From positions 186,001 through 250,000 of IMG/VR virus record IMGVR_UViG_3300028394_002328: DNA of 64,000 nucleotides; one strand, 5' to 3'. The notes beneath the pieces were generated by a model. It was not told the DNA's origin. It saw only the letters and a program-made list of their open reading frames with translations, and searched no databases. The translations under genes were made by a program, and so were the position numbers. Positions 49,574 to 64,000 of the stretch are shown one piece after another (position 1 is the stretch's first letter; every line of letters starts with the position of its first letter).

Positions 49574-49590
49574 GGGTAAATAAACCCAAA

Positions 49591-49614
49591 GCCCCCGAAA
49601 GGGGGTATTTTTTT
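49591..49614 (+). terminator. intrinsic terminator with GAAA tetraloop
   Basis: CCCCC-GAAA-GGGGG followed by TATTTTTTT. Confidence 0.85.
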
Positions 49615-49617
49615 GGC

Positions 49618-49646
49618 TTGACAATTAATTTTTATGGTGTTACAAT
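49618..49646 (+). promoter_or_regulatory. sigma70 promoter
   Basis: TTGACA-17 nt-TACAAT right after the terminator. Confidence 0.75.
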
Positions 49647-49963: not shown

Positions 49964-49981
49964 TTATTTAGGAGATAACAA

Positions 49982-50371: not shown

Positions 50372-50489
50372 ATCAATTGGGTTTTTAAAATATTTAAATA
50401 ATCCTATTATTATGTTATCCGCATTTGGAATAACCGCATTAATATTAATTGCTTCTTTAATCTACATTATTAAGGATTCTATGTCATGA
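50364..50489 (+). CDS. small membrane peptide (start may be 50364 or 50412)
   Basis: Open frame ending in hydrophobic helix MLSAFGITALILIASLIYII. Confidence 0.4.
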   Translation: MNESIGFLKYLNNPIIMLSAFGITALILIASLIYIIKDSMS

Positions 50490-50569
50490 TTTCAGATAAA
50501 CATGTAATGGGCTTTATTTTATTTGGATATGCTATAGTGTTGTGTATGATACTCATGGGGATCGTCTAA
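50486..50569 (+). CDS. 27 aa membrane peptide (MISDKHVMGFILFGYAIVLCMILMGIV)
   Basis: ATGA coupling, single hydrophobic helix. Confidence 0.45.
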   Translation: MISDKHVMGFILFGYAIVLCMILMGIV

Positions 50570-50586
50570 CAGACCGATCCTGACGG

Positions 50587-50632
50587 TTGACAATAATTGG
50601 GCACGGCTATATAATAGAATCTTAGACAGTTA
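50587..50632 (+). promoter_or_regulatory. repeated early sigma70 promoter cassette, copy A
   Basis: TTGACA-17 nt-TATAAT; 27/30 nt identical to 50840-50869; TATAATAGAATCTTAGACAGTTA identical to 63765-63787. Confidence 0.88.
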
Positions 50633-50648
50633 GATAACGGAGTACGCA

Positions 50649-50843
50649 ATGGTAACCCAAGCACAATACACAAACTCGGTAGACTTCTTCAGCCTGTTCG
50701 AAGCCGACACTTTTTCTATGGAAATGTCGGATGATACGACGGGAAACTGGGAAGGTTACATTGGCATCGGTGGAGAATTGGTACAGGCTGCAGGCTTCGA
50801 TGCTATCACCGGTAATGGCTGGTACGACGATACACTGATTTGA
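50649..50843 (+). CDS. early hypothetical protein (64 aa)
   Basis: ACGGAG SD; stop TGA is part of the next promoter's TTGACA. Confidence 0.7.
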   Translation: MVTQAQYTNSVDFFSLFEADTFSMEMSDDTTGNWEGYIGIGGELVQAAGFDAITGNGWYDDTLI

Positions 50844-50869
50844 CAATAATTGGTTTCGGCTATATAATA
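50840..50869 (+). promoter_or_regulatory. repeated early sigma70 promoter cassette, copy B
   Basis: TTGACAATAATTGG-TTT-CGGCTATATAATA. Confidence 0.88.
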
Positions 50870-50899
50870 TACACATACACTGAGAAAACGGAGTAACAA

Positions 50900-51574
50900 A
50901 TGGCTCGCTATCAACGCCCAGTTCTGAATCTTGATGCTGACACTGTTTGGTCGGCTGCTTGTGCGGCTCAACGTATCAACGGTGAGTATGTCAAGGCTGT
51001 TACCTCTTATGTGACTAACGAGGACATTCTTCCCGAGTCTGAGCAGACTCCTCCTAAAGAAATCAACCGCGATATTATCAACCGTTTGGTTGCCGATCCG
51101 AGTCTGATCACCGATGCTGACCGTGTTCAGGCTGAGGCTGTTCGTAAGTACTACAAAGCGTTTACTTTCAAAATCCTTCAAGGTAAGATGTTGTCGGAGT
51201 TTGACAACAACGCAATGGTTATCTCTAACCGCGATGTTATCGAATCCAACTATGATGTTGCGGTGATCGCAAGTCTCCCTGCTTCGTATGAGCGGGCCGT
51301 CAAGCGTGACAATCTTAACCGTAAGATTGACAGTGCGTCGGGTGGATTTGTTGGTCGTGTTGGTGATAAAGTTAAACTCACTGTTGAGGTTATTCGTAGT
51401 GTGTTTAGCCAGCAGTGGAACGTGTTCTTTATCACTGGTATCACTACTGACGATCAGCCGGTGTTCTTCAGCTATCGTGAAACTATCCCAACTGGCAAGA
51501 CAATTGTTGCTCAGGGTACAGTTAAGGCTCACCGTGATAACACTACCCAACTCAATCGGGTGAAACTTGTCTAA
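50900..51574 (+). CDS. early protein with probable C-terminal OB fold
   Basis: FVGRVGDKVKLTV.V...F......I.......VFFS......G..I...GTVKAH...TQLNRVK is OB-fold-like. Confidence 0.6.
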   Translation: MARYQRPVLNLDADTVWSAACAAQRINGEYVKAVTSYVTNEDILPESEQTPPKEINRDIINRLVADPSLITDADRVQAEAVRKYYKAFTFKILQGKMLSEFDNNAMVISNRDVIESNYDVAVIASLPASYERAVKRDNLNRKIDSASGGFVGRVGDKVKLTVEVIRSVFSQQWNVFFITGITTDDQPVFFSYRETIPTGKTIVAQGTVKAHRDNTTQLNRVKLV

Positions 51575-51660
51575 GTTAGAAAGGACAATTCAATTGGTAG
51601 GAATCATCACTATGGTGATTTCTATCACTTACTTGCTAAATCATTATATTGGTAAGTGCA

Positions 51661-51668
51661 TATAAATA
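51661..51668 (+). promoter_or_regulatory. exact T4 late promoter consensus TATAAATA
   Basis: 40 nt upstream of the 51708 gene. Confidence 0.55.
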
Positions 51669-51707
51669 TTTTTTGTGAAATTCAAACACAAACAAGTAGA
51701 GGATAAA

Positions 51708-52112
51708 ATGGGTCTTGATATGTATGCTTATGTTGGGAACCCCGGACAACGTGACGATTATTGGTATAAGAGTTTGGATAGGGATTCTACTGTTAATAAG
51801 CCCCGTGACATTGCATATTGGCGTAAACATCCTAATCTACATGGTTGGATGGAACAACTTTGGGTTAGCAAAGGTAAACCTGGAAGAAAGCATGACGATT
51901 CCGATTTCAATGGAATTGAACTTGAACTGACTTGGGAAGATGTTGACGCACTTGAACGGGCAGTTAAACACGGCATGCTTCCTTCTACCAATGGTTTTTT
52001 CTTTGGAAATCCCTCAGATGATGTATACTACGAACGGGATTTGGAATTCTGTATCAATGCTAAGACAGAATTGTTCCTAGGGTTGAGAGTTTTTTACAAT
52101 TCAAGTTGGTAA
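51708..52112 (+). CDS. phage hypothetical protein (MGLDMY...YWRKH.NLHGWM family)
   Basis: GAGGA SD before ATG 51708. Confidence 0.75.
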   Translation: MGLDMYAYVGNPGQRDDYWYKSLDRDSTVNKPRDIAYWRKHPNLHGWMEQLWVSKGKPGRKHDDSDFNGIELELTWEDVDALERAVKHGMLPSTNGFFFGNPSDDVYYERDLEFCINAKTELFLGLRVFYNSSW

Positions 52113-52114
52113 TT

Positions 52115-52459
52115 ATGGCAGGCTACAACGCAATACTAGAACTTCGCAGACTAGAATCAGAATTAGATCAAATTGGTCTTATGCTTACGGCACCTAAACA
52201 TGGTTGGGGCAGTGACATGAGTGACCGCGCAGGGGTTCAGCCCAAAGACGCAGATAGTCTACCTATCTACTGCCGTGATGCTGAAGTTATGTGCGGTTCA
52301 TTAAGTGAAATTCGTATTTGGTTGAATGGCATTCAATGGGCTCGCAAGTATGACCAAATGTTGTTTGGTCAAAAACATGACAAGAACCGTGAACGCAAAG
52401 AACAAGATGAACGCAATCGCCAATTGGTGAGTATTATCACTAAAGGAGAAAAAGAATGA
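52115..52459 (+). CDS. hypothetical protein
   Basis: ORF packed between neighbours. Confidence 0.65.
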   Translation: MAGYNAILELRRLESELDQIGLMLTAPKHGWGSDMSDRAGVQPKDADSLPIYCRDAEVMCGSLSEIRIWLNGIQWARKYDQMLFGQKHDKNRERKEQDERNRQLVSIITKGEKE

Positions 52460-53784
52460 GCGCAAGTTGGATTAACAAACTGAATGAGAGTGATAGCCGA
52501 CTGTACAAGGAAGATATTATTCGACAAGCCCTCGAGGCAAGTGTCCTTGGTAGTACTAATGCTGTTAATTTTTTGACATTGACTAAGGTCTGCTACAATC
52601 CTTATGTAACATTTGGTGTTCGTCAAATCCCAAGTACAGAAGGTATTACTGGTGCTGAAAATCCTTGGGAAGAGTTTAATGACCTTCTACACAATCTTGG
52701 TCAACGAGGTCTAACTGGTAATGCTGCTAGGGACGCTATTGAAGATATGAGCCTTAGGTTTGATAGCGAAGAATGGAATACATTCTGTGCTCCTGTACTT
52801 AGGCGAGACCTTCGTGCAGGTGTATCAGAAAAAACGATTAACAAAATCTGTAAGAAAACAGATTACGAAATCCCTGTTTTTGCTTGCCAATTGGCTGCTA
52901 ATAGCGAAGGTCGCCCTGAAATGAAGGGTGTCAAACGCCTTGAGCCTAAGTTGGATGGTGTCAGGGTACTAATGATGGTTATGGTATCTGATACGGGAAA
53001 TGCAGTATTTTCGTATAGTCGTAATGGTAAACTGTTTGAAAACTTCACCCATATTGAAAATCAGATTGGTGAGTACTTACCAAAATTGATTAGGCATAAC
53101 CGTTCATTGATGAAGGGTTTTGTACTTGACGGTGAGGTTATTGGAAATTCTTTCCAAGAATTGATGCGTCAGGCTCGCCGTAAAGAAAATGTACAAGCTA
53201 CTGATTCAGTATTCAACATTTTTGATATAATCCCAATTGATGATTTTCGTCGAGGATATTGGAACGCTCAACTTGAAAAGCGTATTGAGATGCTAGAATA
53301 CATGCGTCCTGTAATTGATGTATTGCCCAACGTAGAGTTGCTTCCGCACATTATGGTAGACCTTGATACCAGTGAAGGTAAAGACCAACTTATGCGTTAT
53401 GCTAAGGATCAAGTCAATGCAGGGTTCGAGGGTATTATGATTAAGGATGTTGGTGCTCCTTACGAATGCAAGCGTAATACATTTTGGATGAAGTGGAAGC
53501 CAACTATTACAGTTGATTTAGAGGTGATCGGTGTTGAAGAGGGTACTGGAAGAAATGTAGGACGACTTGGAGCACTGGTTTGCTCAGGCGTAGATGATGG
53601 GAAATTTATCACAGTCAATGTGGGTAGTGGCTTTAGCGACGGTGATAGAGATGATTATTGGACTAATCGGAATTTTATCATTGGTCGCACTTGTGAAATC
53701 TTGTGTGATGTAATTACACAAAACCAAGATGGTACATATAGTTTGCGTTTCCCACGCTTTATTCGGTTTAGGGATGATAAATGA
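52456..53784 (+). CDS. lig: ATP-dependent DNA ligase
   Basis: EPKLDGVR (KxDG), VLDGE, FEGIMIK, WMKWK, VGSGF, SLRFPRF. Confidence 0.94.
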   Translation: MSASWINKLNESDSRLYKEDIIRQALEASVLGSTNAVNFLTLTKVCYNPYVTFGVRQIPSTEGITGAENPWEEFNDLLHNLGQRGLTGNAARDAIEDMSLRFDSEEWNTFCAPVLRRDLRAGVSEKTINKICKKTDYEIPVFACQLAANSEGRPEMKGVKRLEPKLDGVRVLMMVMVSDTGNAVFSYSRNGKLFENFTHIENQIGEYLPKLIRHNRSLMKGFVLDGEVIGNSFQELMRQARRKENVQATDSVFNIFDIIPIDDFRRGYWNAQLEKRIEMLEYMRPVIDVLPNVELLPHIMVDLDTSEGKDQLMRYAKDQVNAGFEGIMIKDVGAPYECKRNTFWMKWKPTITVDLEVIGVEEGTGRNVGRLGALVCSGVDDGKFITVNVGSGFSDGDRDDYWTNRNFIIGRTCEILCDVITQNQDGTYSLRFPRFIRFRDDK

Positions 53785-53999
53785 GTAAAGAAGCCATGCG
53801 TGAGGCTCTAGAAGCATTAGAGTGGATGCGTGTGGCTTTCAAACAAAACAGTCAGGGCAGACAAGTTGCTGATTCGGCAATAGAAGCATTGAAAATGGCA
53901 CTTGGGCCTGAGGTTTTGGAATTTGACATACTTGACAAGTACGACCAAGTAATTTACAATACAGGAAACATTAAAGGAAATTTTACAAATGAAAATTAG
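53781..53999 (+). CDS. hypothetical protein
   Basis: ATGA coupling to ligase; its 3' end doubles as a promoter. Confidence 0.5.
   Translation: MSKEAMREALEALEWMRVAFKQNSQGRQVADSAIEALKMALGPEVLEFDILDKYDQVIYNTGNIKGNFTNEN
53932..53960 (+). promoter_or_regulatory. sigma70 promoter inside the 53781 ORF
   Basis: TTGACA-17 nt-TACAAT. Confidence 0.65.
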
Positions 54000-54384
54000 C
54001 GAATTATCAGAATCACTCGACCTTATTCAATTAGCAACCATTAGTGATAAAGCACTTGATGATGTTTATCATTATGGACGAAGTACTCCTGGCAAGAACT
54101 TTGGATGGCTCGCTAATTTAGAATCAGCAAAAGCGGCACTGAAACTTATCCAACAAGGTGCTACCGATGTTGATGTTATTGCCGATGCTATTCACGATGG
54201 TTGGAATATTACTGCCATGGCAGATTACAACGGTGAGTTGGATCTAGACACTCCTACACCCGATGAAAAGAAATTGAAACGGTATAAGTTGGCACAACAG
54301 AGTTATGCACAACTTCCTGAAGAAGAGAAAGAAAAAGACCGAGTAGTTGCTCGGGCATTGTTAAAAGCATTAAAAGGAATTTAA
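53989..54384 (+). CDS. RyR-repeat-like domain protein
   Basis: AIHDGW ... YAQLPEEEKEKDR matches the RyR-domain H..W ... Y..L.E.EK.KDR pattern. Confidence 0.55.
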   Translation: MKISELSESLDLIQLATISDKALDDVYHYGRSTPGKNFGWLANLESAKAALKLIQQGATDVDVIADAIHDGWNITAMADYNGELDLDTPTPDEKKLKRYKLAQQSYAQLPEEEKEKDRVVARALLKALKGI

Positions 54385-54385
54385 A

Positions 54386-55696
54386 ATGGTAACATTAGTT
54401 AAACATGAATGGCATCAAGTTGATTCACAATTTGCCTTTGAGTTAGACTCTGATAAACTCAGCGAAATTTATCCTGAGTTAGAGGAAGAAGAAATTGAAG
54501 CAATGATGGCACAGATTGAAGCCGGCGAAGTTAGCGTTGAAGAAATTGTTAACGAAGCGTGGGACAATGATGTAGAAATTGAATGGGATCGCCAATATGA
54601 TGATTGGTGGACCGATCGTAAGGGTGGGTATGATATTACCTATGAACTAGGTAACGAAAAAAGTTGGCATACTCCTGCAGAGGAAGCACCTGATACAACT
54701 AAATGTACTAAGTGTCGTTGGACTGGTAAAAACTACGAAACACGCACTCAGCACCATCGTGTTGACGGCACAGTAATTGAAAATTATCACTCTACTGAAG
54801 AAGTATCGGATCACACCAGTGATGTATGCCCAATGTGTGACAGTTCAGTTGAGTTGACCGAAGCAGGTGTAGCAGAAGAAGAAAAACGCAAAGCACAAAA
54901 AGAAAAATGGGCAAAAGCCAGAGAGGAAAAAGAAATGGCTGTTGAAAAAGAAAACATTGATCTTGACGGAGGTTTGAGTGCCGTTAATGAACAAGAAGAA
55001 ATCACCGATGAAGAAGAAGAATTGGTAGCGCCGGCGTGGCCGTTCCCTGAAGTTGAAGTACTTCCTAACTATCCTGCAGGTGAGTATGCTATTCGTATTT
55101 GGGGTCGTACCCGTGAAATTGGTGTAGGTACTATCTCTAAAGAACAGTATGAACACTGGAGTGATTCAGACCATGAGGATGATCTTAGTGATGCACTAAA
55201 TGAAAGTTATGACTATGATGAAAACGAAACTCCTGAAAATGCTCGGTTTAATCATGCCTACTATGAATACCAAGATGTAAAATCATTTTGGGGTTTTGAT
55301 GAAGATGATACTCATATGACTATCACCAATAGTGATAATGAGGAAATCTATGACGGTACCCTAGAAGATTTCATTTATCAGGCACACGGTGATAGATTTT
55401 CACGTTGGGAAGCCACTGAAGAAGAGGAAGAATTATATACTGAAGATTTGGGTACAGGTTACTTTGTAATGTGGACTCAAGGTGGTAAGGGCAGTTGTAT
55501 TCAGACTTCAATTGAAACTGAAGGTAAAGAATTCGATCCACGCAAACTAAGTTATAAAACTTGGGATGTTCAAGGAAGTTCTGTGGTACATCGGTTGATG
55601 TATGACGGGTATGAACTTGAAGATGAGGGCATGGACTCACATAAAGACAACTGGCGTGGTCAATGGAGCGAATTCTCGGTTCATCATAATGCATGA
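54386..55696 (+). CDS. highly acidic hypothetical protein with CxxC...CxxC
   Basis: CTKC and CPMC; very high Asp/Glu content; AAGGA SD. Confidence 0.7.
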   Translation: MVTLVKHEWHQVDSQFAFELDSDKLSEIYPELEEEEIEAMMAQIEAGEVSVEEIVNEAWDNDVEIEWDRQYDDWWTDRKGGYDITYELGNEKSWHTPAEEAPDTTKCTKCRWTGKNYETRTQHHRVDGTVIENYHSTEEVSDHTSDVCPMCDSSVELTEAGVAEEEKRKAQKEKWAKAREEKEMAVEKENIDLDGGLSAVNEQEEITDEEEELVAPAWPFPEVEVLPNYPAGEYAIRIWGRTREIGVGTISKEQYEHWSDSDHEDDLSDALNESYDYDENETPENARFNHAYYEYQDVKSFWGFDEDDTHMTITNSDNEEIYDGTLEDFIYQAHGDRFSRWEATEEEEELYTEDLGTGYFVMWTQGGKGSCIQTSIETEGKEFDPRKLSYKTWDVQGSSVVHRLMYDGYELEDEGMDSHKDNWRGQWSEFSVHHNA

Positions 55697-55895
55697 TTTT
55701 GTAGGAAAGTCTTATGTTTTCCCTGACGGTGATAGCATCACCGTCACTCAAGTTAAGGTTCGTGACGGTAACGAAGAATGGGTGACATATCAAACAAAGC
55801 AAGGACCCGGTGTCCCTCGCAAGTTAGTTATGTCATTACATGAATTCAATAACACATATGGATATCTGTTTAAAGGTGAGGACAATAACAAGTGA
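55689..55895 (+). CDS. hypothetical protein (MHDFVGKSY...)
   Basis: ATG 55689 overlaps the previous stop; shorter than the track ORF. Confidence 0.6.
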   Translation: MHDFVGKSYVFPDGDSITVTQVKVRDGNEEWVTYQTKQGPGVPRKLVMSLHEFNNTYGYLFKGEDNNK

Positions 55896-55930
55896 TAATT
55901 TAAACCATTAAGTAACAATAAATACTTACT

Positions 55931-57487
55931 ATGCTTAAAAGAATATTCACTCTTACCAACCTCACACTATTAACTGCGCTGACACTAAGCACTATTGCAG
56001 CTTGGTATAGTATTCTAGGATTAACAGCAATCTTTGCGGCTGCTGTTATTCCCATTATTATAATGGGTAGCGCACTAGAAATATCAAAGGTTGTTACCAC
56101 TGTTTGGTTGCACAAATACTGGCCTAAAGTAAAATGGACTATGCGTGTCTATCTTGTAGCTGCCGTCATAGCACTTGCTTTCTTAACCAGTATGGGAATC
56201 TTTGGCTTCTTAAGTAAAGCACATAGTGATCAGGGCCTAGTATCAGGTGACGTGGCTGCTAAGATAGCAATTTATGATGAAAAAATTAAAACAGCAAGGG
56301 AAAATATAGATGTTAACCGTAAGGCGCTTAAACAACTTGATGAATCAGTGGACCAAGTTATGGGTCGAAGTACGGATGAGAAAGGTGCCGATAAAGCCGT
56401 GGCTCTACGTAGGAATCAACAAAAAGAGCGTGGGCGTCTCCTTGCTGAAATTGAAGCCGAACAGAAAAAAATTAGTAGTCTTAATGAAGAAAGGGCACCC
56501 ATTGCTGCCGAAATACGCAAAGTAGAAGCGGAAGTTGGCCCAATCAAATACATAGCCGCTCTTATCTACGGTGATAACCCTGATGCTAACCTACTTGAAA
56601 GAGCAGTACGATGGGTAATTATTCTTATTGTAAGTGTGTTTGATCCATTAGCACTAACTCTTGTATTAGCGGCAAATGGTAGTAGGGTGTGGGATAGAGA
56701 AGAACCTAAAGTAGAAGAAAAACCCGAAGAAGAACCTGAGTATGAACCAGATGATGGTCCACTTACCGAAGAGCAAATAGAACAAGTTGAAGAAACGGTA
56801 GAGAAACCTGTAATAGATGAGTACGCTTATTTGAAAAAGCCGTGGAAAGGGTTTACATCTGGTTCTACAGTTGGATTAGTCTCTAAACCTGAAGAAAAGA
56901 TTGAAGAACAGCCTGAAGAAATCCCTTGTTTCAAATGCGGAACGACTTTAATGAATGCCCCAGGTATTGGATTGTTCTGTCCAAATCTAAAGTGTGATGT
57001 TAGAGATGGTCCTTTTGAAGAGGAAGAATCAGTTGAACTAATAGTAGAACCTAAGGCAGAGTCAATAACAATTGAAACTACAGGGGTGACTAAAGAAAAA
57101 CCATATAGAGAAATTGATGAAGATTATGTGTTAACTAGTGACGGAAAACACATTCGTAAGGAAGCATTAAAAGAAATGCGTCCTGATTTATTCACTATCA
57201 AAGCCGATATGGCTAATCAGATTAGTACGAACTTTGGAGCACAATTTCCAAAGTTCTCTAATAAGGGCGATGTATTTGTAAGAGTAGATATATTACCTAA
57301 TAAGGTATACAAATTTGATGGTAACAAATGGATAGAGATAAACAAAGAGTTATCCGATTCATACTTGTATGACCAAGCATATATTCAATTTTTAATTTCA
57401 AAAATAGATTCGGGAGAATATGAAGTTGATTTATTATCTGATAACGAAAAGGCACAGATTGCATCGTACCTAAGTTCATCTAAATAA
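55931..57487 (+). CDS. multi-pass membrane protein with coiled coil and acidic C-terminal region
   Basis: About three N-terminal hydrophobic helices, heptad coiled coil, a further TM (WVIILIVSVFDPLALTLVLAA); late motif at 55917. Confidence 0.75.
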   Translation: MLKRIFTLTNLTLLTALTLSTIAAWYSILGLTAIFAAAVIPIIIMGSALEISKVVTTVWLHKYWPKVKWTMRVYLVAAVIALAFLTSMGIFGFLSKAHSDQGLVSGDVAAKIAIYDEKIKTARENIDVNRKALKQLDESVDQVMGRSTDEKGADKAVALRRNQQKERGRLLAEIEAEQKKISSLNEERAPIAAEIRKVEAEVGPIKYIAALIYGDNPDANLLERAVRWVIILIVSVFDPLALTLVLAANGSRVWDREEPKVEEKPEEEPEYEPDDGPLTEEQIEQVEETVEKPVIDEYAYLKKPWKGFTSGSTVGLVSKPEEKIEEQPEEIPCFKCGTTLMNAPGIGLFCPNLKCDVRDGPFEEEESVELIVEPKAESITIETTGVTKEKPYREIDEDYVLTSDGKHIRKEALKEMRPDLFTIKADMANQISTNFGAQFPKFSNKGDVFVRVDILPNKVYKFDGNKWIEINKELSDSYLYDQAYIQFLISKIDSGEYEVDLLSDNEKAQIASYLSSSK

Positions 57488-57565
57488 ATTACCAAATAAC
57501 TTTAATTTTTCCAATAATTATGACATAATTTATTGTGTCACAAATTCTTTCAAGATATATACTTC

Positions 57566-58765
57566 ATGACCTTAGAAAATAAAATCACCCACTGCACTTT
57601 TTGTGGAAGCCACAAAGAAGTTGTAAAAAAGTTAATTGTCAGCGAATCGGTTGCAATTTGCAGTGATTGCATTGAACTATGTAATCAACTAATCAATGAT
57701 GATTCTTCAGTTGAATCTGAAAAAATAGAACATCAAACCTATGATGCTATTCAAATTAAAGAGTATTTGGATCAGCATATCATAGGACAAGCTGATGCTA
57801 AAATGATTCTCAGTGTTGCTATAGCAAATCACTTTAAACGAATTACACATCCTCCTGAAGATTTAGAAATCCAAAAGGGAAATGTGTTACTAATTGGTCC
57901 TACTGGATCAGGTAAAACGTTACTAGCAAAAACTGTAGCAAAGTTTTTGAATGTACCATTTGTAGTTGCTGATGCTACATCATTAACAGAAGCAGGTTAC
58001 GTTGGTGATGATGTTGAAAGTATGATTAGTATGTTAGTTAATTCAGCCGGCGGTGATGTTAAAAAAGCAGAACGCGGTATTGTATTCATTGACGAAATTG
58101 ATAAGATTGCCCGTAAAGGTGAATCTACTAGCATTACCCGTGATGTATCGGGGGAAGGTGTTCAACAAGCACTACTTAAATTAGTAGAGGGTACTATATG
58201 TCGTATTCCTGCAGGTGGTGGTAGAAAACATCCCGGTGGTGATATGTTAGAAGTTAATACTAAAAACATTTTATTCATTTCAGGTGGTGCATTTGTAGGC
58301 CTATATGATATTATTAAATCAAGGGTCAAGGGCACTAGAATTGGTTTCGGTGCTAATGTTATTGCCAACCATGAAGATATTGAACTAAATTTAGTTTCGC
58401 CCGATGATTTAACTAAGTTTGGAATGATTCCTGAGTTCATTGGTAGATTTACTACATCAGTTGTTCTAACTGATTTAGATAGGGATGAACTACTTAAGGT
58501 ATTAACAGAAATCAAAAATAACTATATAAACCAATACCAATATCTATTTTCACTAGATAATATTGATTTGAATTTTGATACCGAAGCATTAGAGCAAATA
58601 GTAGATAATTGCCTAGAACTTAAAACAGGTGCTCGTGGTCTACATACTGAAATTGAACGGTGCTTAATGCCACATATGTATAATGCTCGCAAATACCATG
58701 ATCATGGTATAACCGTGATAAATATTAGTCAGGACATGGTGATTAATCCACAACCATTAGTATGA
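57566..58765 (+). CDS. clpX: ATP-dependent Clp protease ATP-binding subunit ClpX
   Basis: C4 zinc finger (CTFC...CSDC), GPTGSGKT, TEAGYVGDDVE, FIDEIDK, RDVSGEGVQQALLK, GARGL. Confidence 0.95.
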   Translation: MTLENKITHCTFCGSHKEVVKKLIVSESVAICSDCIELCNQLINDDSSVESEKIEHQTYDAIQIKEYLDQHIIGQADAKMILSVAIANHFKRITHPPEDLEIQKGNVLLIGPTGSGKTLLAKTVAKFLNVPFVVADATSLTEAGYVGDDVESMISMLVNSAGGDVKKAERGIVFIDEIDKIARKGESTSITRDVSGEGVQQALLKLVEGTICRIPAGGGRKHPGGDMLEVNTKNILFISGGAFVGLYDIIKSRVKGTRIGFGANVIANHEDIELNLVSPDDLTKFGMIPEFIGRFTTSVVLTDLDRDELLKVLTEIKNNYINQYQYLFSLDNIDLNFDTEALEQIVDNCLELKTGARGLHTEIERCLMPHMYNARKYHDHGITVINISQDMVINPQPLV

Positions 58766-58983
58766 GTTCAAAGGGCAGAAAAGTATTAGTACAAGACGGT
58801 AATGTAGAAAAGGCGCTAAGAAAATTTAAAAAGAAAATTAGCGAAGATGGCCTGCTCCAAGAAGTTCAAGACCGTAGATTTTATAATAAGCCAACCGAAA
58901 AAAGAAAAGTTGCTAAAGCCCAAGCAAAGAAACGTTGGAAAAGATTTTTAAATAGTCAAGAAATTCCTAAGAAACTTTTTTAA
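58762..58983 (+). CDS. rpsU: 30S ribosomal protein bS21
   Basis: V.V.DGNVEKALRKFKKK...GLLQE...RRFY.KPTEKRK. Confidence 0.9.
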   Translation: MSSKGRKVLVQDGNVEKALRKFKKKISEDGLLQEVQDRRFYNKPTEKRKVAKAQAKKRWKRFLNSQEIPKKLF

Positions 58984-59018
58984 CCAAAATAGTAGAATTT
59001 TTTACGAAAATTATTTAT

Positions 59019-59062
59019 GATAAATACTGTTGTAGATGCCGATAGTCGGGTCTACAATCAGT
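59019..59062 (+). promoter_or_regulatory. late motif followed by a long 5'-leader hairpin before the small HSP gene
   Basis: GATAAATA 59019-59026; ACTG-TTGTAGA..CCGA-TAG-TCGG..TCTACAA-T-CAGT stem. Confidence 0.6.
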
Positions 59063-59089
59063 CATCTTGCTTATTAAAGGAGAAAACAA

Positions 59090-59536
59090 ATGACAAATAC
59101 ATTATCCCTTCGTTCCCTTGACATTCCGTCACTTCATAAGTTTGGTATCGGTTTCGATACAATGTTTGATGAACTTATGAGACAAACTTCCGCACAACAA
59201 CAAACAAATTATCCACCATACAATGTTGTGAAACATAGTGAGGATAAGTTTACCATTGAATTGGCAGTTGCTGGTTTTAAAAATGGTGACATTGATGTTA
59301 CTGTAGAAAAGAATCAACTAACCGTCAAGGGTGAAAAAGCAGTTAATTTGGATGAAACAGTTGAATATCTACATCGTGGTATTAGTGCCCGTAATTTCAT
59401 TAGAACTTGGACGCTAGCCGATCATGTTGAAGTAACTGGTGCTGTTGTATCTGATGGTATGTTGACTATCAATTTAGAACGTCAAATTCCTGAAGAGCAA
59501 AAACCCAAGAAGATTGCTATTACCTACACTAAATAG
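59090..59536 (+). CDS. small heat-shock protein (Hsp20/IbpA-like)
   Basis: NYPPYNVVK, IELAVAGF, YLHRGISARNF.R.W.LA, DGMLTI.L, PEEQKPKKI.I. Confidence 0.92.
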   Translation: MTNTLSLRSLDIPSLHKFGIGFDTMFDELMRQTSAQQQTNYPPYNVVKHSEDKFTIELAVAGFKNGDIDVTVEKNQLTVKGEKAVNLDETVEYLHRGISARNFIRTWTLADHVEVTGAVVSDGMLTINLERQIPEEQKPKKIAITYTK

Positions 59537-59547
59537 TATAGTAGCGT

Positions 59548-59576
59548 ATGTGTGCAGCATCCGCTGCACACATTTT
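59548..59576 (+). terminator. perfect 11 bp hairpin, terminator/attenuator-like
   Basis: ATGTGTGCAGC-ATCC-GCTGCACACAT-TTT between the sHSP gene and clpS; T tail is short. Confidence 0.6.
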
Positions 59577-59590
59577 ATGAGAGAACTAAA

Positions 59591-59896
59591 ATGTCCAAAG
59601 CCGATACTAAAATCAAAATTAAACCAAACTTGGGTCTTAAAGAACCGCCCCTTTTCAAAATCATTTACATGAATGATGATGTTACATCTATGGAATTTGT
59701 AATCAATTCTTTGGTTGATTATTTTAACTATAGTAATGAATCTGCCGCTTCAATTACAGATAGCATTCATGAACATGGTAGTGCGGTAGTTGCTATTTTA
59801 CCCTATGAAATCGCAGAGCAAAAGGGCATTGAAGTAACACTAGATGCAAGAACACATGGTTATCCTCTTCAAATCAAAGTAGAGGTTGAGTCTTAA
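59591..59896 (+). CDS. clpS: Clp protease adaptor ClpS
   Basis: KEPPLFKIIYMNDDVTSMEFV, IH..G.AVV....YEIAEQK, YPLQI. Confidence 0.9.
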   Translation: MSKADTKIKIKPNLGLKEPPLFKIIYMNDDVTSMEFVINSLVDYFNYSNESAASITDSIHEHGSAVVAILPYEIAEQKGIEVTLDARTHGYPLQIKVEVES

Positions 59897-60573
59897 ATTT
59901 CTATATCAATTCTTTTAGCCCAATAAGGGCTACTATTATTATATGGATTATTAAAATAGTTGACACTATTCAATGTAGTGTCAACTATTTTTCCATATGT
60001 ACCAAATCCCCAATGTGAAACCTTAGATTCCATATCTGCTAATAGTGTAATTACTAACTCAGGAACACCTTTAAGATTTTTAGGGGTTTCTCCAAAATAC
60101 AAATCATTACTAGGCACAGCACTAGTTAACACGAATATTTTTTTCACATCCAAATGTTTTTGTAACTTTTGTATTGAATTTTTTAGATATACTAAATCAC
60201 TATAACGGTTGATCTCTACTGATTCAGTAACCGAATCAGTATGCCATCCATTAGCACCCAATATAGCAATACCATCAATCAACACAACATGATGGTATAA
60301 TAACGCAACACTAGTAATCTTATTACAAATATTAGCTATTTCATGTGTTCTTTTTTCTATAGATTCTGCATTCTCATATTCTAGTGCACCAGGTATATAA
60401 AATATACCTTGATAGAAGTTTGATAGGTATTTAAGGGTGTTTAATAAAACACCCATGTCAGAACTTACATTACCGGCTACTACGCAATATAGACTAGTAG
60501 CCTTATCTTCCCAATTAAAACTATCTTCCGATGAAAGATTTAAATCACTGATTAAATCAAACCCTATCTTCAC
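59893..60573 (-). CDS. calcineurin-like metallophosphoesterase with degenerate motifs
   Basis: ISDLNL (normally SDLH), VAGNV (normally AGD), PGALE (normally GNHE). Confidence 0.6.
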   Translation of the reverse strand: MKIGFDLISDLNLSSEDSFNWEDKATSLYCVVAGNVSSDMGVLLNTLKYLSNFYQGIFYIPGALEYENAESIEKRTHEIANICNKITSVALLYHHVVLIDGIAILGANGWHTDSVTESVEINRYSDLVYLKNSIQKLQKHLDVKKIFVLTSAVPSNDLYFGETPKNLKGVPELVITLLADMESKVSHWGFGTYGKIVDTTLNSVNYFNNPYNNSSPYWAKRIDIEI

Positions 60574-60893
60574 TTCGCTACAGTCATTTTAGGTTTTTTT
60601 GCTCTAGGCTTAGCAGCAGGTTTAGGCTGTTCGGCAGTTGTAGATTCTACCGTAGCTTTTTTAGCTCTTGTTCTTTTTGGTTTAGCAACTACTTCAGGTT
60701 GCTCTACTGTTTCTACTACGGCAGGAGTTTCTACTACAGACTCGCTAACAGTAGCAACAGGTACAGTAGGTTCAGTAACAGGCCATGCATTAGCTTCTTC
60801 AACTGGAGCAATCTTAGATGCTTCTCTGCTTCTAAAGTATAACAGGCATCCAATAATACCTATCACTACAACCAAAACAATAATTACTTCCAT
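60570..60893 (-). CDS. membrane-anchored low-complexity protein with basic tail
   Basis: N-terminal TM helix, Pro/Val/Glu linker, KPKRTRAKK tail; AGGAG SD and TAAATA upstream on minus strand. Confidence 0.7.
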   Translation of the reverse strand: MEVIIVLVVVIGIIGCLLYFRSREASKIAPVEEANAWPVTEPTVPVATVSESVVETPAVVETVEQPEVVAKPKRTRAKKATVESTTAEQPKPAAKPRAKKPKMTVAK

Positions 60894-60977
60894 CATATAT
60901 CTCCTAAACAAGTATTTAACATAACCTCTACCAAATCTAATATTATTTAATTAGGTAAGAAGAATAAATACTAAACT

Positions 60978-62555
60978 ATGCGTGATTTACTAAACCTCAT
61001 CCAAACCCTATCTGAAGCTAGCACTCTGAGTGCATCGGAGATTATAAATCGGACCGGTAGATTTGAAAAATTCATATCAATGATTGCTAATCAACAGCCG
61101 TTTTATACTATTGATCAAGAATCGGTGATTGCTGACCCTTCCGAAGCAGACCGTTTCCAACAATTATATGATAATGGCAAATTTTCAGGTACTCTTAAAA
61201 TTAAATTAGAAGATGGTAGGCAAATTCTATTAAGTCAATTGTTAAAAACCTCTGATTTAGGAGGACAGGCTAAAACAGGTGAAGAGGGTGAAGAAACTGG
61301 TAAAGAATCAGCTTTATTAAAACCTTCTCAGATTAAAATCACTGACAAAGACATTCCTGCTAGTCAATTAGGAGAAACAATTATTAATAACAGTGTGCTG
61401 CAATCTACTGATTATGGAAGATTAGTCATTGAAATGGCTGAAACTATTATGAATGGTGGGAACCCAGTTATCTCCAAAGATGTTCCTTCCAAGATTAAAG
61501 ATAGTATTGTTGACTACGCAGGTGAGTATTTAGGTGTGTTGGCACTAGTATCGGGTACTTCCCGTTTCCCTAGAAAGAAGGGTTTTACTGAATGGCTAGG
61601 AAGTGATGTATCTGAGTTAATTATTAATTTTCCAGGTAAAGCTAATACTAACATAGCCGATAGCTATGCCAGCATTTCTAACGATAAAACAAATCACAAA
61701 ATTAATATTTCAAGTAAAGGTCAAGGTGGCGGTGCTCCTCCAAGTGTAAGTGGATTAAAGGTACCTGATGAAATTAGAAATAATCCTGATTATCTTGGTG
61801 CAGTAGGTTTCATTGATTTATGTGATAATGGCACTAAAAAGGTTCCCGCTAAAATATCTTTACCATCACCTAGAACTATTAGCTCCGTCTTTGCTGCTAT
61901 GAATTTATTAAATGAAGTAGCACCCGAATCTATCCCGCAGAAATTTAAATCAGTGTTACCGTGGGATGTTAATAAAATTACAAAAGATGTAAAACAAAGC
62001 ATCGAAGATTTTAAAAAAAATGTGCAGCCATCTAGGCCTAATTCTTATCCAGGTAAGATGCCAGGCTATGATATATTTTTTAATGACATTAAATTTCAAA
62101 AACCAAGTAGCGACGGTGGAAAGTTAACTCATGCAGTTAAATTAGCAGTGATGAATGCAGTAAACGAAGGCCAAGCTATTCCTGAATTCCAAGATGTGGT
62201 ATTATCCATTTTAGATATGAACTTCATTCAGCAATACGCAGACTTTGATCCTAAGAGTAGAATAATGAGCTTTGCTACACAATGGCCTGCTAAACTTGAA
62301 GGAAAAATTACATTAGAATCTAAATCAGGAGGAACTGATCCAACTAAAGGTGGATTCAGTTTTAAATTAGCCAATACAGCACCTAAAACTGATTTGGAAG
62401 AGCCTGATGAACTAGGGGCAGGCGTCGAACCTGATGATGGTGTTATAGGTACGGTATCCGATTTGTCTACATCATCAATGGATATTGTTAATCCAAAAAG
62501 AAGAGAGCCAAAAGAACCTAAACCATCAGGAGATGTTGGGCGTAAAAAACGTTGA
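60978..62555 (+). CDS. large late hypothetical protein, possibly PD-(D/E)xK nuclease-like
   Basis: Late motif at 60963; N..IADSY......INISSKG resembles a D..x(S/E)xK core (weak). Confidence 0.55.
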   Translation: MRDLLNLIQTLSEASTLSASEIINRTGRFEKFISMIANQQPFYTIDQESVIADPSEADRFQQLYDNGKFSGTLKIKLEDGRQILLSQLLKTSDLGGQAKTGEEGEETGKESALLKPSQIKITDKDIPASQLGETIINNSVLQSTDYGRLVIEMAETIMNGGNPVISKDVPSKIKDSIVDYAGEYLGVLALVSGTSRFPRKKGFTEWLGSDVSELIINFPGKANTNIADSYASISNDKTNHKINISSKGQGGGAPPSVSGLKVPDEIRNNPDYLGAVGFIDLCDNGTKKVPAKISLPSPRTISSVFAAMNLLNEVAPESIPQKFKSVLPWDVNKITKDVKQSIEDFKKNVQPSRPNSYPGKMPGYDIFFNDIKFQKPSSDGGKLTHAVKLAVMNAVNEGQAIPEFQDVVLSILDMNFIQQYADFDPKSRIMSFATQWPAKLEGKITLESKSGGTDPTKGGFSFKLANTAPKTDLEEPDELGAGVEPDDGVIGTVSDLSTSSMDIVNPKRREPKEPKPSGDVGRKKR

Positions 62556-62579
62556 CAAAGAATAAAATTCCTGTATAAT
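62552..62579 (+). promoter_or_regulatory. sigma70 promoter for clpP
   Basis: TTGACA-16 nt-TATAAT; upstream stop TGA lies inside the -35 box. Confidence 0.7.
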
Positions 62580-62604
62580 AGTTATTATTTTACAAAGGAA
62601 TTTT

Positions 62605-63195
62605 ATGAGTTTAGTCCCAATTGTACTTGAGCAAACATCCCGCGGCGAACGCAGTTATGATATCTATAGTCGGCTGTTGCGTGACCGTGTAATTCTCCTA
62701 GAAGGGGAAGTTCATGACCAAATGGCAAATCTGATTGTTGCTCAATTACTTTACCTTGAAAGTGAAGATAGCAATAAGGATATTAATCTTTACATTAACT
62801 CACCGGGTGGATCAGTTACCGCAGGTATGGCTATCTATGATACTATTCAATTTATTACACCTGATGTTTCAACCATTGTTATGGGACAGGCATGTAGTAT
62901 GGGTAGTTTGTTAGCACAAGCAGGTGCTAAAAATAAACGGTTGATTTTACCTAATGCTCGCCATATGATTCATCAACCAAGCGGTGGTGCACGTGGTCAG
63001 GCTACTGATATGGAAATTCAAGTAAAAGAAATCCTTGAAATGAAGCGTAATCTTACCAACATCTATGTTAAACACAATTCAAAGGGAAAGACTTTTGAGG
63101 AGTTGACTAGGGATATGGAACGAGACCGATTCATGTCCGGTGAAGAAGCGGTTGAGTATGGACTAGCCGACCGTATCATTGACAAGCGGCCGTAA
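62605..63195 (+). CDS. clpP: ATP-dependent Clp protease proteolytic subunit ClpP
   Basis: [33 protein letters not shown] (Ser), MIHQPSGG (His), ERD.FM (Asp). Confidence 0.96.
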
Positions 63196-63197
63196 AT

Positions 63198-63226
63198 TTG
63201 ACAATAAATGGGCAGTGATGTATAAT
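63198..63226 (+). promoter_or_regulatory. repeated early promoter
   Basis: TTGACAATAAATGG...TATAAT with 17 nt spacer. Confidence 0.85.
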
Positions 63227-63257
63227 GAAATTATACGCTAAGAAAACGGAGAAACAA

Positions 63258-63467
63258 ATGGAATTTGAATCAATTGTTGTCAACACGATCAAACCATTGC
63301 TGGGCTCAGGAGAGCAAGTAGATTTCAGTTATGGCACACTGTTCGTAAATTGTGCCGAAGACACAGCCCGTTGTATTTTTCACACACTTTGTGACAACTT
63401 CGGCGGAGTCAACAAGGTCCGCATCAGCAAGTGTGGTGAAGAATTCGCCTTCGATTTTGTCGCTTGA
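63258..63467 (+). CDS. early hypothetical protein (69 aa)
   Basis: ACGGAG SD before ATG 63258; track start 63225 lies within the -10 box. Confidence 0.7.
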   Translation: MEFESIVVNTIKPLLGSGEQVDFSYGTLFVNCAEDTARCIFHTLCDNFGGVNKVRISKCGEEFAFDFVA

Positions 63468-63492
63468 CAATAAATGGTTTTGGATCTATAAT
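63464..63492 (+). promoter_or_regulatory. repeated early promoter
   Basis: TTGACAATAAATGG...TATAAT with 17 nt spacer; contains the upstream stop codon. Confidence 0.85.
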
Positions 63493-63522
63493 ACTTGTAT
63501 TGAATCAACAAAAGGTCACAAA

Positions 63523-63723
63523 ATGACACAGTTTATTGCTAAAGGTTACATTGAAAACGGTGACTCAGCCATTCTTTGGAGAATGGCCGACTATCACTAT
63601 CAACTGGAAGTTGGGTTTGGAACACCTAGACAACGGTCCATTGATTTGACGGATACCGAGTACTACGATGCTTATTGTATGTTGCAGGCAATTTGTATGG
63701 ATAAAGTGGAAGTTGTTGCGTAA
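63523..63723 (+). CDS. early hypothetical protein (66 aa, MTQFIAKGY...)
   Basis: AAGG SD downstream of promoter 63464; shorter than the track ORF. Confidence 0.7.
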   Translation: MTQFIAKGYIENGDSAILWRMADYHYQLEVGFGTPRQRSIDLTDTEYYDAYCMLQAICMDKVEVVA

Positions 63724-63741
63724 AAACAACATTACCAAAGG

Positions 63742-63787
63742 TTGACAATAAATCAGGTTCCCTGTATAATAGAATCTTAGACAGTTA
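63742..63787 (+). promoter_or_regulatory. repeated early promoter cassette
   Basis: TTGACA-17 nt-TATAAT plus 23 nt identical to 50610-50632. Confidence 0.88.
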
Positions 63788-63803
63788 AACAACGGAGTTC
63801 AAA

Positions 63804-64000
63804 ATGCGTACACCAACTATCATCAACGGTCTGAAAAACTCTCAAAAATTCCGTGTGATTTTCAAGGGCGATGGCTCTGAAAATGACGTTGGACTTTACA
63901 TGACGGTAAAGCAAATGTCTGAAATGTTTGCTACGACCAACGCCCGCTCATTGTGTTATGAAGCCCTTGAGATGTTGGTTTCTGAGCGCAAATATATGAA
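63804..64000 (+). CDS. early hypothetical protein, truncated by the window end (MRTPTIING...)
   Basis: ACGGAG SD; frame open to base 64000. Confidence 0.65.
   Translation, partial: MRTPTIINGLKNSQKFRVIFKGDGSENDVGLYMTVKQMSEMFATTNARSLCYEALEMLVSERKYM

What the first reader, a model, noticed from the sequence alone, without database searches (positions are those of the whole stretch)
50587..63803. Repeated early promoter-RBS cassettes flanking single small genes
Seen: 50587 and 50840 are 27/30 identical direct repeats bracketing one ORF; 50610-50632 equals 63765-63787 (23 nt); 63198 and 63464 share TTGACAATAAATGG; the RBS block AGAAAACGGAG(T/A)AACAAATG recurs before 50900 and 63258. Known: T4-type phages shuffle early genes through repeated promoter elements (PeSL-type). 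Inference: a recombination-based gene-cassette exchange system for host-takeover genes.
Basis: partly seen in the sequence, partly recalled or inferred. Interest (0 to 1): 0.6.

Follow-up and report, generated by a model that had tools for sequence, protein, structure and literature searches.

The report
Promoter cassettes shuffling small phage genes
A 335-kb freshwater jumbo phage puts the same ~65-base promoter-plus-ribosome-site block in front of many small genes of unknown function, and comparison with about 240 related loci shows these genes are gained, lost and moved as units whose edges lie in that block, as already described for the 'PeSL' elements of T4-like phages.

Summary
The repeats are real. 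Five copies of a perfect TTGACA-N17-TATAAT promoter lie at window 50587, 50840, 63198, 63464 and 63742. Similarity runs about 65 nt, from the -35 box through one of two leader types to GGAG and the ATG. The genome (335 kb, T4-type capsid gene) has 12 strong copies in three arrays.

In 240 related IMG/VR loci the same model finds about 425 copies, all on the gene strand and all in the same three hot spots. Units are about 337 nt with a roughly 90-aa ORFan.

Array content and order differ between relatives. Homology breakpoints fall at cassette edges. The 64-aa gene bracketed by 50587/50840 is present in one close relative and cleanly absent in another, which keeps a single hybrid cassette. Twenty-one of 44 cassette-led families occur in more than one array.

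I conclude these are host-sigma70 early expression cassettes that also act as homology patches for recombinational module shuffling. This is PeSL-like, but mostly without the stem-loop terminator. No junction or circle was shown, because only contigs were available. The 'host-takeover' role is untested. The 12 kb between the two window arrays (ligase, ClpX, ClpP) is conserved backbone. Verdict: a new variant of a known kind, of moderate interest.

The parts
49591..49616 (+). Intrinsic-terminator-like hairpin (GC stem plus T-run) directly upstream of the entry promoter of array B. This is the one clear PeSL-style stem-loop-plus-promoter in the window.
49618..49646 (+). Near-consensus promoter (TTGACA-N17-TACAAT, starting TTGACAATTAAT). 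It is the left border of the variable block: homology to relatives L089 and L095 ends 12 nt into it, at window 49630.
50558..50582 (+). Hairpin of 9-10 bp without a T-run, just upstream of cassette B1.
   Evidence: MFE -12 kcal/mol for the 45 nt upstream of 50587
50587..50651 (+). Cassette B1: perfect -35/-10 with 17-nt spacer, leader type A (contains TTAGACAGTTAGATAACGGAG), ATG at 50649.
   Evidence: nhmmer 54.8 bits
50649..50843 (+). 64-aa ORFan carried as one unit with B1. Its TGA stop lies inside the -35 hexamer of B2. Present in L095 and absent in L089. 21 of the 32 nucleotide differences from the L095 copy are at third codon positions.
50840..50902 (+). Cassette B2: perfect promoter, leader type B (contains ACACTGAGAAAACGGAG), ATG at 50900. 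It drives the first backbone gene.
   Evidence: 57.8 bits
50900..51574 (+). 224-aa conserved backbone gene (family 2 of the ligase loci, phrog_2319, function unknown). It marks the right end of array B.
52456..53784 (+). ATP-dependent DNA ligase. Conserved backbone, used as the anchor to fetch relatives.
57533..58765 (+). ClpX-like AAA+ unfoldase (zf-C4_ClpX plus AAA_2). Conserved backbone.
62552..62579 (+). Separate perfect TTGACA-N16-TATAAT promoter in front of ClpP. It is not a member of the cassette family.
62605..63195 (+). ClpP protease. Conserved backbone; it marks the left end of array A.
63198..63260 (+). Cassette A1 (type-B-like leader), starting 2 nt after the ClpP stop codon.
   Evidence: 45.1 bits
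63258..63467 (+). 69-aa ORFan whose TGA stop lies inside the -35 hexamer of A2. Its homologues (up to 80% aa identity) sit in array B of other phages.
63464..63525 (+). Cassette A2, with a divergent leader.
   Evidence: 33.7 bits
63523..63723 (+). 66-aa ORFan.
63742..63806 (+). Cassette A3 (leader type A; 23 nt identical to B1).
   Evidence: (47.8 bits)
63804..64000 (+). 5' part of an 85-aa gene (family 17, the commonest cassette-led family). It runs off the window. The array continues with a 77-aa ORF and a fourth cassette at genome 250317, which leads backbone family 22.

Best explanation
Each repeat is a compact expression cassette of about 65 nt. It holds a consensus host-sigma70 promoter with an unusually conserved spacer, a short unstructured leader of one of two main types, a GGAG Shine-Dalgarno and the ATG. 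Each cassette sits in front of one small ORFan (median 90 aa). Units are packed head to tail with no terminator between them; the upstream stop codon often lies inside the next -35 box. The arrays occupy three fixed hot spots of a T4-capsid-type freshwater jumbo phage: after ClpP, before the 224-aa gene upstream of ligase, and before a 344-aa AAA-like gene. The primary role of a cassette is strong, presumably early, transcription and translation by the host machinery (inferred). Because the same 65 nt recur in direct orientation, they also act as portable homology. General homologous recombination between cassettes deletes, inserts, replaces, reorders and moves [cassette+ORF] modules within and between arrays and between co-infecting relatives; the phage encodes a RecA/UvsX-like protein. 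Shown: repeat anatomy, clade-wide conservation, variable content, breakpoints at cassette edges, families shared between arrays. Inferred: timing of expression, homologous recombination as the mechanism, circular intermediates.
For: Anatomy: conservation runs only from the -35 box to the ATG. Leaders are essentially unstructured. The genome has 12 strong copies, all on the gene strand.

Clade-wide conservation: 146, 120 and 159 copies were found in three sets of 80 related loci. All are on the anchor gene's strand and all lie in the same hot spots. Complete relatives have 14-51 copies against 0-1 for the control pattern.

Unit structure: period 337 nt and ORF median 90 aa. The gap from stop codon to the next -35 box is 10 nt or less in 66% of units, and the TGA of TTGACA is the stop codon in 29%.

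Variable content and order: the orthologous site holds from one cassette (L019, L080) to seven units. Family 41 lies before family 17 in L014, L025 and L026 but after it in L073 and L088.

Breakpoints:
- Between L014, L025 and L026, every indel is one [cassette+gene] unit.
- OWN, L089 and L095 replace blocks exactly between cassette starts. L089 lacks the 64-aa gene and keeps one hybrid cassette, with the upstream flank of cassette 1 and the leader of cassette 2.
- HSP endpoints are 6.6-9.5 times enriched in cassettes.

Inter-array movement: 21 of 44 families occur in two or more arrays. Array-C modules of this genome are 90-92% nt identical to array-B modules of L089/L095, with homology starting and ending at cassette edges.

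Concerted-evolution signal: cassettes within one locus resemble each other more than unrelated ones elsewhere, and the leader tracks the downstream gene family.

Machinery: a RecA/UvsX-like gene is present. No tyrosine or serine recombinase was found, with positive controls ringing.

In-sample heterogeneity: contigs from other metagenomes match the cassettes and then diverge into several different flanks exactly at cassette edges. In an RNA library, exact contigs cover ClpP and the array only, and one spans a cassette.

Precedent: PeSL-mediated shuffling in T4-like phages (PMC2839356, PMC4122927).
Against: - No recombinant junction, circle or deletion read was observed. The runs were Logan contigs, and the joints have about 30-nt sides at 85% likeness, so they may come from relatives or repeats.
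- Breakpoints at cassette edges are partly expected wherever a conserved element abuts unrelated genes, whatever the mechanism.
- Promoter activity and early timing are not measured.
- The RNA evidence is thin (depth 2-4) and DNA carry-over cannot be excluded.
- All relatives are metagenome assemblies.
- The array-C to array-B transfer rests on one assembly for this genome's array C.
Confidence: 0.7

Rival explanations
1. The cassettes are only strong promoters and translation starts, kept alike by selection for expression. Array variability arises by illegitimate recombination or other processes, and survivors simply need a promoter. The cassettes are bystanders, not crossover sites.
For: Perfect -35/-10 boxes and SD, and unstructured leaders. 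No dedicated recombinase. No junction reads. Conserved elements next to unrelated genes automatically end alignments at their edges.
Against: The spacer and leader positions, which sigma70 does not read, are as conserved as the hexamers across phages whose ClpP is only about 80% identical. Alignments overlap on a single cassette where one unit is missing, which is the hybrid-cassette signature. Whole modules reappear in other arrays with homology starting and stopping at cassette edges. Paralogous cassettes are homogenised within a locus. Short homology of this length is reported to suffice for T4-type recombination (PMC2839356).
Confidence: 0.15
2. The apparent shuffling is an artefact: metagenome assemblers jumped between strains or loci at the repeated cassettes and produced chimeric contigs.
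For: All compared sequences are metagenome contigs. Logan contigs break at cassettes. This genome's array-C arrangement has no independent replicate among the loci fetched.
Against: The longest exact match between cassettes of this genome is 36 nt, shorter than usual final assembly k-mers and far shorter than reads. This genome's arrays A and B are reproduced base for base over 20.6 kb in another IMG/VR contig (L009/L093). Identical arrangements recur in contigs from different samples: L132=L133, L134=L136=L137, L153=L156=L158 and L198-L201. L089 and L095 share their array independently. Contigs from non-source runs span ClpP, cassette and gene with 0 mismatches.
Confidence: 0.05
3. A dedicated, site-specific (integron-like) exchange system exists. 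An unrecognised phage protein binds the conserved spacer or leader and catalyses or targets cassette excision and integration.
For: The 17-nt spacer is unexpectedly well conserved (80-99% per position) and the leader carries a TTAGA direct repeat. Three fixed 'docking' arrays share one gene pool. Many genes in the genome are uncharacterised.
Against: No tyrosine or serine recombinase was found, with controls ringing. Cassettes have no inverted repeats or attC-like folds. Crossovers are not at one fixed position: homology ends 12 nt into some cassettes and at the leader in others. The conserved positions could equally be an operator or a promoter-strength determinant.
Confidence: 0.07
4. The arrays are tandem duplications of one promoter+gene unit, and the ORFs have since diverged.
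For: Head-to-tail units of similar size.
Against: Genes within an array fall into different families with no detectable similarity. The cassettes stay 75-95% alike while the ORFs are unrelated. The same family appears next to different neighbours.
Confidence: 0.03

Closest known systems
PeSL (promoter-early stem-loop) cassettes of T4-like phages RB49/phi1, T4/PST and KVP40/nt-1 (Arbiol et al. 2010, PMC2839356; Comeau et al. 2014, PMC4122927)
   Same: A near-perfect sigma70 promoter (TTGACA-N17-TATAAT, as in RB49/phi1) ending in an SD and the start codon. Repeated in direct orientation between small ORFans. Clustered in hyperplastic regions between conserved blocks. Indels, replacements and ORF displacements between relatives lie at the elements. 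Homology of about 50-65 nt is proposed as the substrate for the phage's own recombination.
   Different: The stem-loop terminator just upstream of the promoter, which is half of the PeSL definition, is absent from most units here. In 66% the previous stop codon is within 10 nt of the -35 box or inside it, and upstream folding energy equals background. There is no AT-rich upstream region. The promoter spacer and a 30-nt leader are conserved instead. The host phage is a 335-kb uncultured freshwater jumbo phage whose capsid protein is nearest to Phosso, Vibrio 2.275.O and PA5oct-type jumbo phages (66-73% aa), not to a classical T4-like phage. Mini-circles have not been shown.
Host-takeover module of Bacillus phage SPO1 (from memory: Stewart et al. 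1998, Virology)
   Same: A dense cluster of small early genes, each or nearly each with a very strong host-sigma promoter and a strong ribosome-binding site.
   Different: In SPO1 the module is a single block in the terminal redundancy, with characterised host shut-off functions. Cassette-mediated exchange between relatives was not the point there. This comparison is recalled, not tested here.
Integron gene-cassette arrays
   Same: Arrays of single promoterless-sized ORFs at a fixed platform, a shared cassette pool, and variable number and order.
   Different: Integrons need an IntI tyrosine recombinase, attI and folded attC sites, and one common promoter. Here there is no tyrosine or serine recombinase, no attC-like structure, and every unit brings its own promoter.
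ORFanage / hyperplastic regions of cyanophages and T4-likes (e.g. PMC4503421)
   Same: Clusters of small ORFans that are gained and lost rapidly between close relatives.
   Different: Those regions are defined by content variability. A conserved 65-nt promoter-leader unit at each gene boundary is the specific feature here.

Membership tests
PeSL (T4-like promoter-early stem-loop cassette) | Strong sigma70-like promoter (-35, about 17-nt spacer, -10) | tested here: met
   Perfect TTGACA-N17-TATAAT in all five window copies and in the 12 strong genome copies.
PeSL (T4-like promoter-early stem-loop cassette) | Shine-Dalgarno and start codon of the downstream gene at the 3' end of the element | tested here: met
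   GGAG 6-9 nt before the ATG. Similarity stops at the ATG.
PeSL (T4-like promoter-early stem-loop cassette) | Stem-loop (terminator) just upstream of the promoter | tested here: not met
   Mean MFE of the 45 nt upstream is -6.7 against -5.6 for controls. The stop-to-(-35) gap is 10 nt or less in 66% of units and the stop is inside the -35 box in 29%. Exceptions occur at array entries: window 49591-49616 and L053.
PeSL (T4-like promoter-early stem-loop cassette) | AT-rich region upstream of the -35 box | tested here: not met
   AT fraction is 0.622 in the 22 nt upstream against 0.625 background. There is no sequence conservation upstream.
PeSL (T4-like promoter-early stem-loop cassette) | Concentrated in hyperplastic regions and adjacent to indels or replacements between close relatives | tested here: met
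   Three hot spots with variable content. Breakpoints at cassettes are 6.6-9.5 times enriched.
PeSL (T4-like promoter-early stem-loop cassette) | Recombination between neighbouring elements yields mini-circles or deletions (inverse PCR) | not testable with these tools
   Only assembled contigs of the runs were available. The joints seen are weak.
PeSL (T4-like promoter-early stem-loop cassette) | Host genome is a T4-like myovirus | tested here: inconclusive
   A gp23-family capsid gene is present (PF07068, E=1.8e-97). However, the nearest named phages are non-classical jumbo phages. RegB, RegA and AsiA were not found, but those searches had no positive control.
Integron | IntI-type tyrosine recombinase next to the array | tested here: not met
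   No PF00589 or PF00239 match in the 335-kb genome, with controls ringing in 14 and 12 genomes.
Integron | attC-type imperfect inverted repeats folding as hairpins at cassette ends | tested here: not met
   Leaders and upstream flanks show no consistent structure. The repeats are direct, not inverted.

The most novel reading that the evidence does not exclude
The cassettes are more than passive homology. Hundreds of freshwater jumbo phages may share an integrase-free, integron-like exchange network. Three or more fixed docking arrays per genome would draw on one common pool of ORFan modules. The strongly conserved promoter spacer and leader would be the recognition site of an unidentified phage protein that targets recombination, or that co-regulates the whole pool.
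Probability: 0.1. Interest if true: 0.75.

Novelty: new variant of a known kind. Interest (0 to 1): 0.45.

Why it matters
Promoter-cassette-mediated module shuffling has so far been documented in a few cultured T4-like phage pairs. Here the same logic appears in a large, uncultured clade of freshwater jumbo phages: at least 599 ClpP-bearing stretches in IMG/VR. The element is leaner, with no terminator and with stop codons embedded in the next promoter. The same ORFan families demonstrably circulate among three arrays up to 150 kb apart. This suggests the mechanism is a general route by which large phages trial accessory early genes. It also gives a sequence handle, the 65-nt model, for harvesting the accessory early-gene pool of this clade from metagenomes. 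The pool is a natural place to look for host-takeover or anti-defence proteins.

Tried and rejected
- **Named phages:** megablast of 6 kb against INPHARED phages gave no match, so there is no annotated close relative.
- **Stem-loops:** tested systematically as the missing PeSL half and rejected as a general feature.
- **AT-rich UP region:** absent.
- **T4 regulators:** RegB, which cleaves GGAG in T4 early mRNAs, RegA (translational repressor) and AsiA were considered as explanations for the conserved leader and promoter. No hits were found, but these searches had no positive control, so they are uninformative.
- **Known RNA families and tRNAs:** Rfam found none in 49000-64000. There are no tRNAs in the window.
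- **Cargo function:** Pfam and PHROGs on 10 proteins of this genome's arrays (9 cassette-led) and Pfam on 20 cassette-led family representatives from relatives. No Pfam match reached its curated cut-off, and the only PHROG hits are to families of unknown function.
- **Sequencing runs:** only Logan contigs were available.
  - The joints listed (skips 519 and 399; goes back 909, 61 and 72) have about 30-nt sides at 85% likeness.
  - They are not in-register cassette-to-cassette joins, so they are not counted as evidence for circles or deletions.
- **Tandem-duplication origin:** rejected, because ORFs within an array are unrelated.
- none.
- **Tools left unused:** the costly protein searches, structure prediction and complex prediction, because the claim does not rest on them.
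Full report
**1. What is in the sequence**

The window is bases 186001-250000 of a 335,035-bp IMG/VR virus record, 95% complete by CheckV.

Perfect TTGACA-N17-TATAAT promoters lie at window 50587, 50840, 63198, 63464 and 63742. Further perfect or near-perfect ones lie at 38054, 45203 and 49618. A separate N16 promoter sits at 62552, in front of ClpP. The extended pattern TTGACAATAA-N13-TATAAT gives 8 matches in the window against 0.23 expected by shuffling. It gives 14 exact matches in the genome against none for the reversed control.

Aligning 15 genome copies shows that similarity begins at the -35 hexamer and stops at the ATG, about 63-65 nt. Nothing is conserved upstream or inside the ORFs. 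After the -10 box there are two main leader types. One contains TTAGACAGTTAGATAACGGAG and the other ACACTGAGAAAACGGAG. Both are essentially unstructured.

An nhmmer model of the block finds 12 strong copies in the genome, all on the + strand, which is also the strand of the genes they lead:
- 85.7-88.5 kb: five copies plus two weak ones
- 97,967
- 236,587 and 236,840 (window 50587 and 50840)
- 249,198, 249,464, 249,742 and 250,317 (window 63198, 63464, 63742, and one copy just beyond the window end)

**2. Context**

Between the two window arrays lies a 12.3-kb block without cassettes. It encodes a 224-aa protein, an ATP-dependent DNA ligase, a ClpX-like unfoldase, ClpP and several unknowns.

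The genome has a T4-type gp23 capsid gene (PF07068, E=1.8e-97). Its closest named relatives, at 66-73% aa identity, are jumbo phages: Sinorhizobium Phosso, Vibrio 2.275.O, Pseudomonas PA5oct and Erwinia pEa_SNUABM. No nucleotide-level relative exists among deposited phages. The sequencing runs that hold the stretch are freshwater or lake metagenomes, apart from four recorded only as 'metagenome'.

**3. Relatives**

Three anchor proteins each fetched 80 IMG/VR loci:
- ClpP
- ligase
- the 344-aa AAA-like protein downstream of the 86-kb array

The cassette model finds 146, 120 and 159 copies in these sets. Every copy is on the anchor's strand, and every copy lies in the same three places:
- array A, directly after ClpP
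- array B, before the 224-aa gene upstream of ligase
- array C, before the AAA-like gene

Copies stand in tandem with a median period of 337 nt, each leading an ORF of median 90 aa. In 66% of units the stop codon ends within 10 nt of the next -35 box. In 29% the stop is the TGA inside TTGACA, so there is no room for a terminator.

Complete relatives of 352-525 kb carry 14-51 copies at one mismatch, against 0-1 for the control. One related lineage has essentially none. Across the clade the 17-nt spacer is conserved at 80-99% per position, as strongly as the hexamers.

**4. Is gene content between the repeats fixed? No**

After ClpP, the orthologous site ranges from a single cassette leading the backbone gene (L019, L080) to seven units. 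Examples, with an asterisk marking a cassette-led family:
- L014: *41 *26 *17 *22
- L025: *41 *26 *54 *17 *u *22
- L026: 111 *41 *26 *54 *89 *17 *22
- L073: *53 *u *26 *212 *17 41 89 *175 *22
- L088: 28 *26 *17 41 *212 *22

Both content and order differ.

Pairwise alignments show that each difference among L014, L025 and L026 is one [cassette+gene] unit. Colinear homology stops and restarts inside cassettes.

It is absent in L089. L089 keeps a single cassette whose upstream flank matches the flank of cassette 1 and whose leader matches cassette 2. That is the product expected from a crossover between the two direct repeats, or the reverse insertion.

The larger replacement between this genome and L089/L095 runs from 12 nt inside the promoter at window 49618 to the start of the cassette at 50840 (against L089) or 50587 (against L095).

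Over all loci, unique internal alignment endpoints fall in cassettes 9.5 times (set A) and 6.6 times (set B) more often than cassette length predicts. This is a rough measure, because pairs are not independent.

**5. Movement between arrays**

Clustering the 359 cassette-led proteins from the three sets gives 44 families with at least two members. Twenty-one of them occur in more than one array and 11 in all three.
- Family A26 equals B27 at up to 93.6% aa identity, and A41 equals B54 at 94%.
- The 69-aa gene right after ClpP in this genome has its relatives in array B of eight other phages.
- Two modules of this genome's array C (genome 86044-86514 and 86441-87159) are 90-92% nt identical to array-B modules of L089 and L095. 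That homology begins at a cassette start and ends at the next cassette.

**6. Signs of cassette-level exchange**

Cassettes in the same locus are more alike than cassettes in different loci with different downstream genes: spacer identity 0.769 against 0.725, and leader identity 0.549 against 0.471. Leader identity is highest for cassettes in front of the same gene family (0.622). This is expected if the leader travels with its gene and the promoter part is homogenised locally.

The pair 50587/50840 illustrates this. The two copies share an unusual spacer ending (CGGCTA) that the orthologous L095 cassettes lack, yet they carry different leader types.

**7. Machinery**

The genome encodes a RecA/UvsX-like protein at 82,174-82,938. 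It has no tyrosine or serine recombinase, with positive controls ringing. General homologous recombination on about 65-nt patches is therefore the economical mechanism. The PeSL authors make the same argument for T4-type phages, citing a requirement of less than 50 bp of homology (PMC2839356).

**8. Reads**

Only Logan contigs were available for the runs laid, so rare junctions cannot be seen.

What the contigs do show:
- Depth spikes over cassettes.
- Many contigs match a cassette and then run into several different, mutually unlike flanks exactly at cassette edges. The positions are L009 10860, 11193, 11713 and 11767, which correspond to window 63464 and 63797 and to two positions beyond the window end.
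- Within single freshwater samples, the cassettes therefore sit in multiple contexts.

The listed joints have about 30-nt sides and are not in-register cassette joins. I do not count them as evidence.

In one metatranscriptome library, exact-match contigs cover only L009 9801-12074, that is ClpP and the array, and none of the flanks. One contig runs from the 66-aa gene across a cassette into the next genes. This is consistent with strong expression and read-through. However, depth is only 2-4 and DNA carry-over cannot be excluded.

**9. Artefact check**

- The longest exact match between cassettes of this genome is 36 nt.
- Arrays A and B of this genome are reproduced without a mismatch over 20.6 kb in another IMG/VR contig.
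- Several arrangements recur in contigs from different samples.

Assembly chimerism is therefore an unlikely general explanation. It cannot be excluded for this genome's array C alone.

**10. Cargo**

The 64-aa ORF differs from its L095 orthologue mostly at third codon positions (21 of 32 differences), so it is a real coding gene.

None of the 10 proteins tested from this genome's arrays (9 of them cassette-led), nor any of the 20 representatives of cassette-led families from relatives, has a Pfam match at the curated cut-off. The few PHROG matches are to families of unknown function. 'Host-takeover' remains a reasonable guess by analogy with early ORFan clusters of T4 and SPO1, not a finding.

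**11. Comparison with the known**

PeSLs are defined as follows (PMC4122927, legend to Fig. 3): an AT-rich region, a stem-loop just upstream of a sigma70-like promoter, then the SD and start codon. They cluster in hyperplastic regions and lie next to indels. Mini-circle formation was shown by inverse PCR (PMC2839356).

Met here: the promoter, the SD/ATG end, the hyperplastic location and the association with indels.

Not met here: the stem-loop and the AT-rich region. Stem-loops appear only at some array entries, such as the terminator-like hairpin at window 49591-49616 in front of the 49618 promoter and a similar one in L053.

Circles could not be tested.

The element therefore works like a PeSL but is a terminator-less variant with a conserved spacer and leader, in a different and much larger phage lineage.

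**12. Verdict**

It is not shown at the level of junctions, and the function of the cargo is unknown. Novelty: a new variant of a known kind. Interest is moderate.

Noticed in passing
window 57533-58765 and 62605-63195: The phage encodes both ClpX and ClpP. ClpP has its own perfect TTGACA-N16-TATAAT promoter at 62552. ClpP relatives at 77-100% aa identity occur in at least 599 IMG/VR stretches, so a phage-borne ClpXP protease is a hallmark of this freshwater jumbo-phage clade.
   Followed up: partly
window 50841-50843 and 63465-63467; relatives: The stop codon of the upstream ORF is the TGA inside the next promoter's TTGACA. This holds in 29% of units across the clade, about the one-in-three expected if the cassette simply terminates whichever ORF enters in that frame.
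   Followed up: partly
relatives G001-G003: Two promoter spacer subclasses recur. One ends ...TTTGGGTATATAAT. The other ends ...ATTGTGCTATAAT and so carries an extended -10 TGn. This may mark two regulatory classes.
   Followed up: no
L068-L077 (G004, 345 kb): One related lineage (ClpP 78-80% identical) has almost no copy of the cassette motif: one hit at one mismatch in the 345-kb record G004. It carries a fixed set of larger genes (886, 314, 243 and 521 aa) after ClpP instead of an array.
   Followed up: no
ligase loci L100-L161, between the 224-aa gene family and ligase: A family of small paralogous proteins (cluster 1, 60-110 aa) occurs in up to five copies per locus, mostly without the cassette. 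It is not present in this genome's window at that site.
   Followed up: no
genome 82174-82938 (L170): A RecA/UvsX-like recombinase gene lies about 2.5 kb upstream of array C.
   Followed up: partly
window 6001-16000: GC content rises to 0.42-0.48 against about 0.35 elsewhere in the window.
   Followed up: no
window 40001-42000: The only 2-kb bin in the window with strongly negative GC and AT skew, suggesting a short block of genes on the opposite strand.
   Followed up: no
L009 9801-12074 (window 62405 to beyond the window end), run X14: In a lake metatranscriptome library, exact-match contigs cover ClpP and the cassette array but none of the 1.8 kb upstream or downstream within the 6 kb laid. 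This hints that the region is highly expressed in situ.
   Followed up: partly
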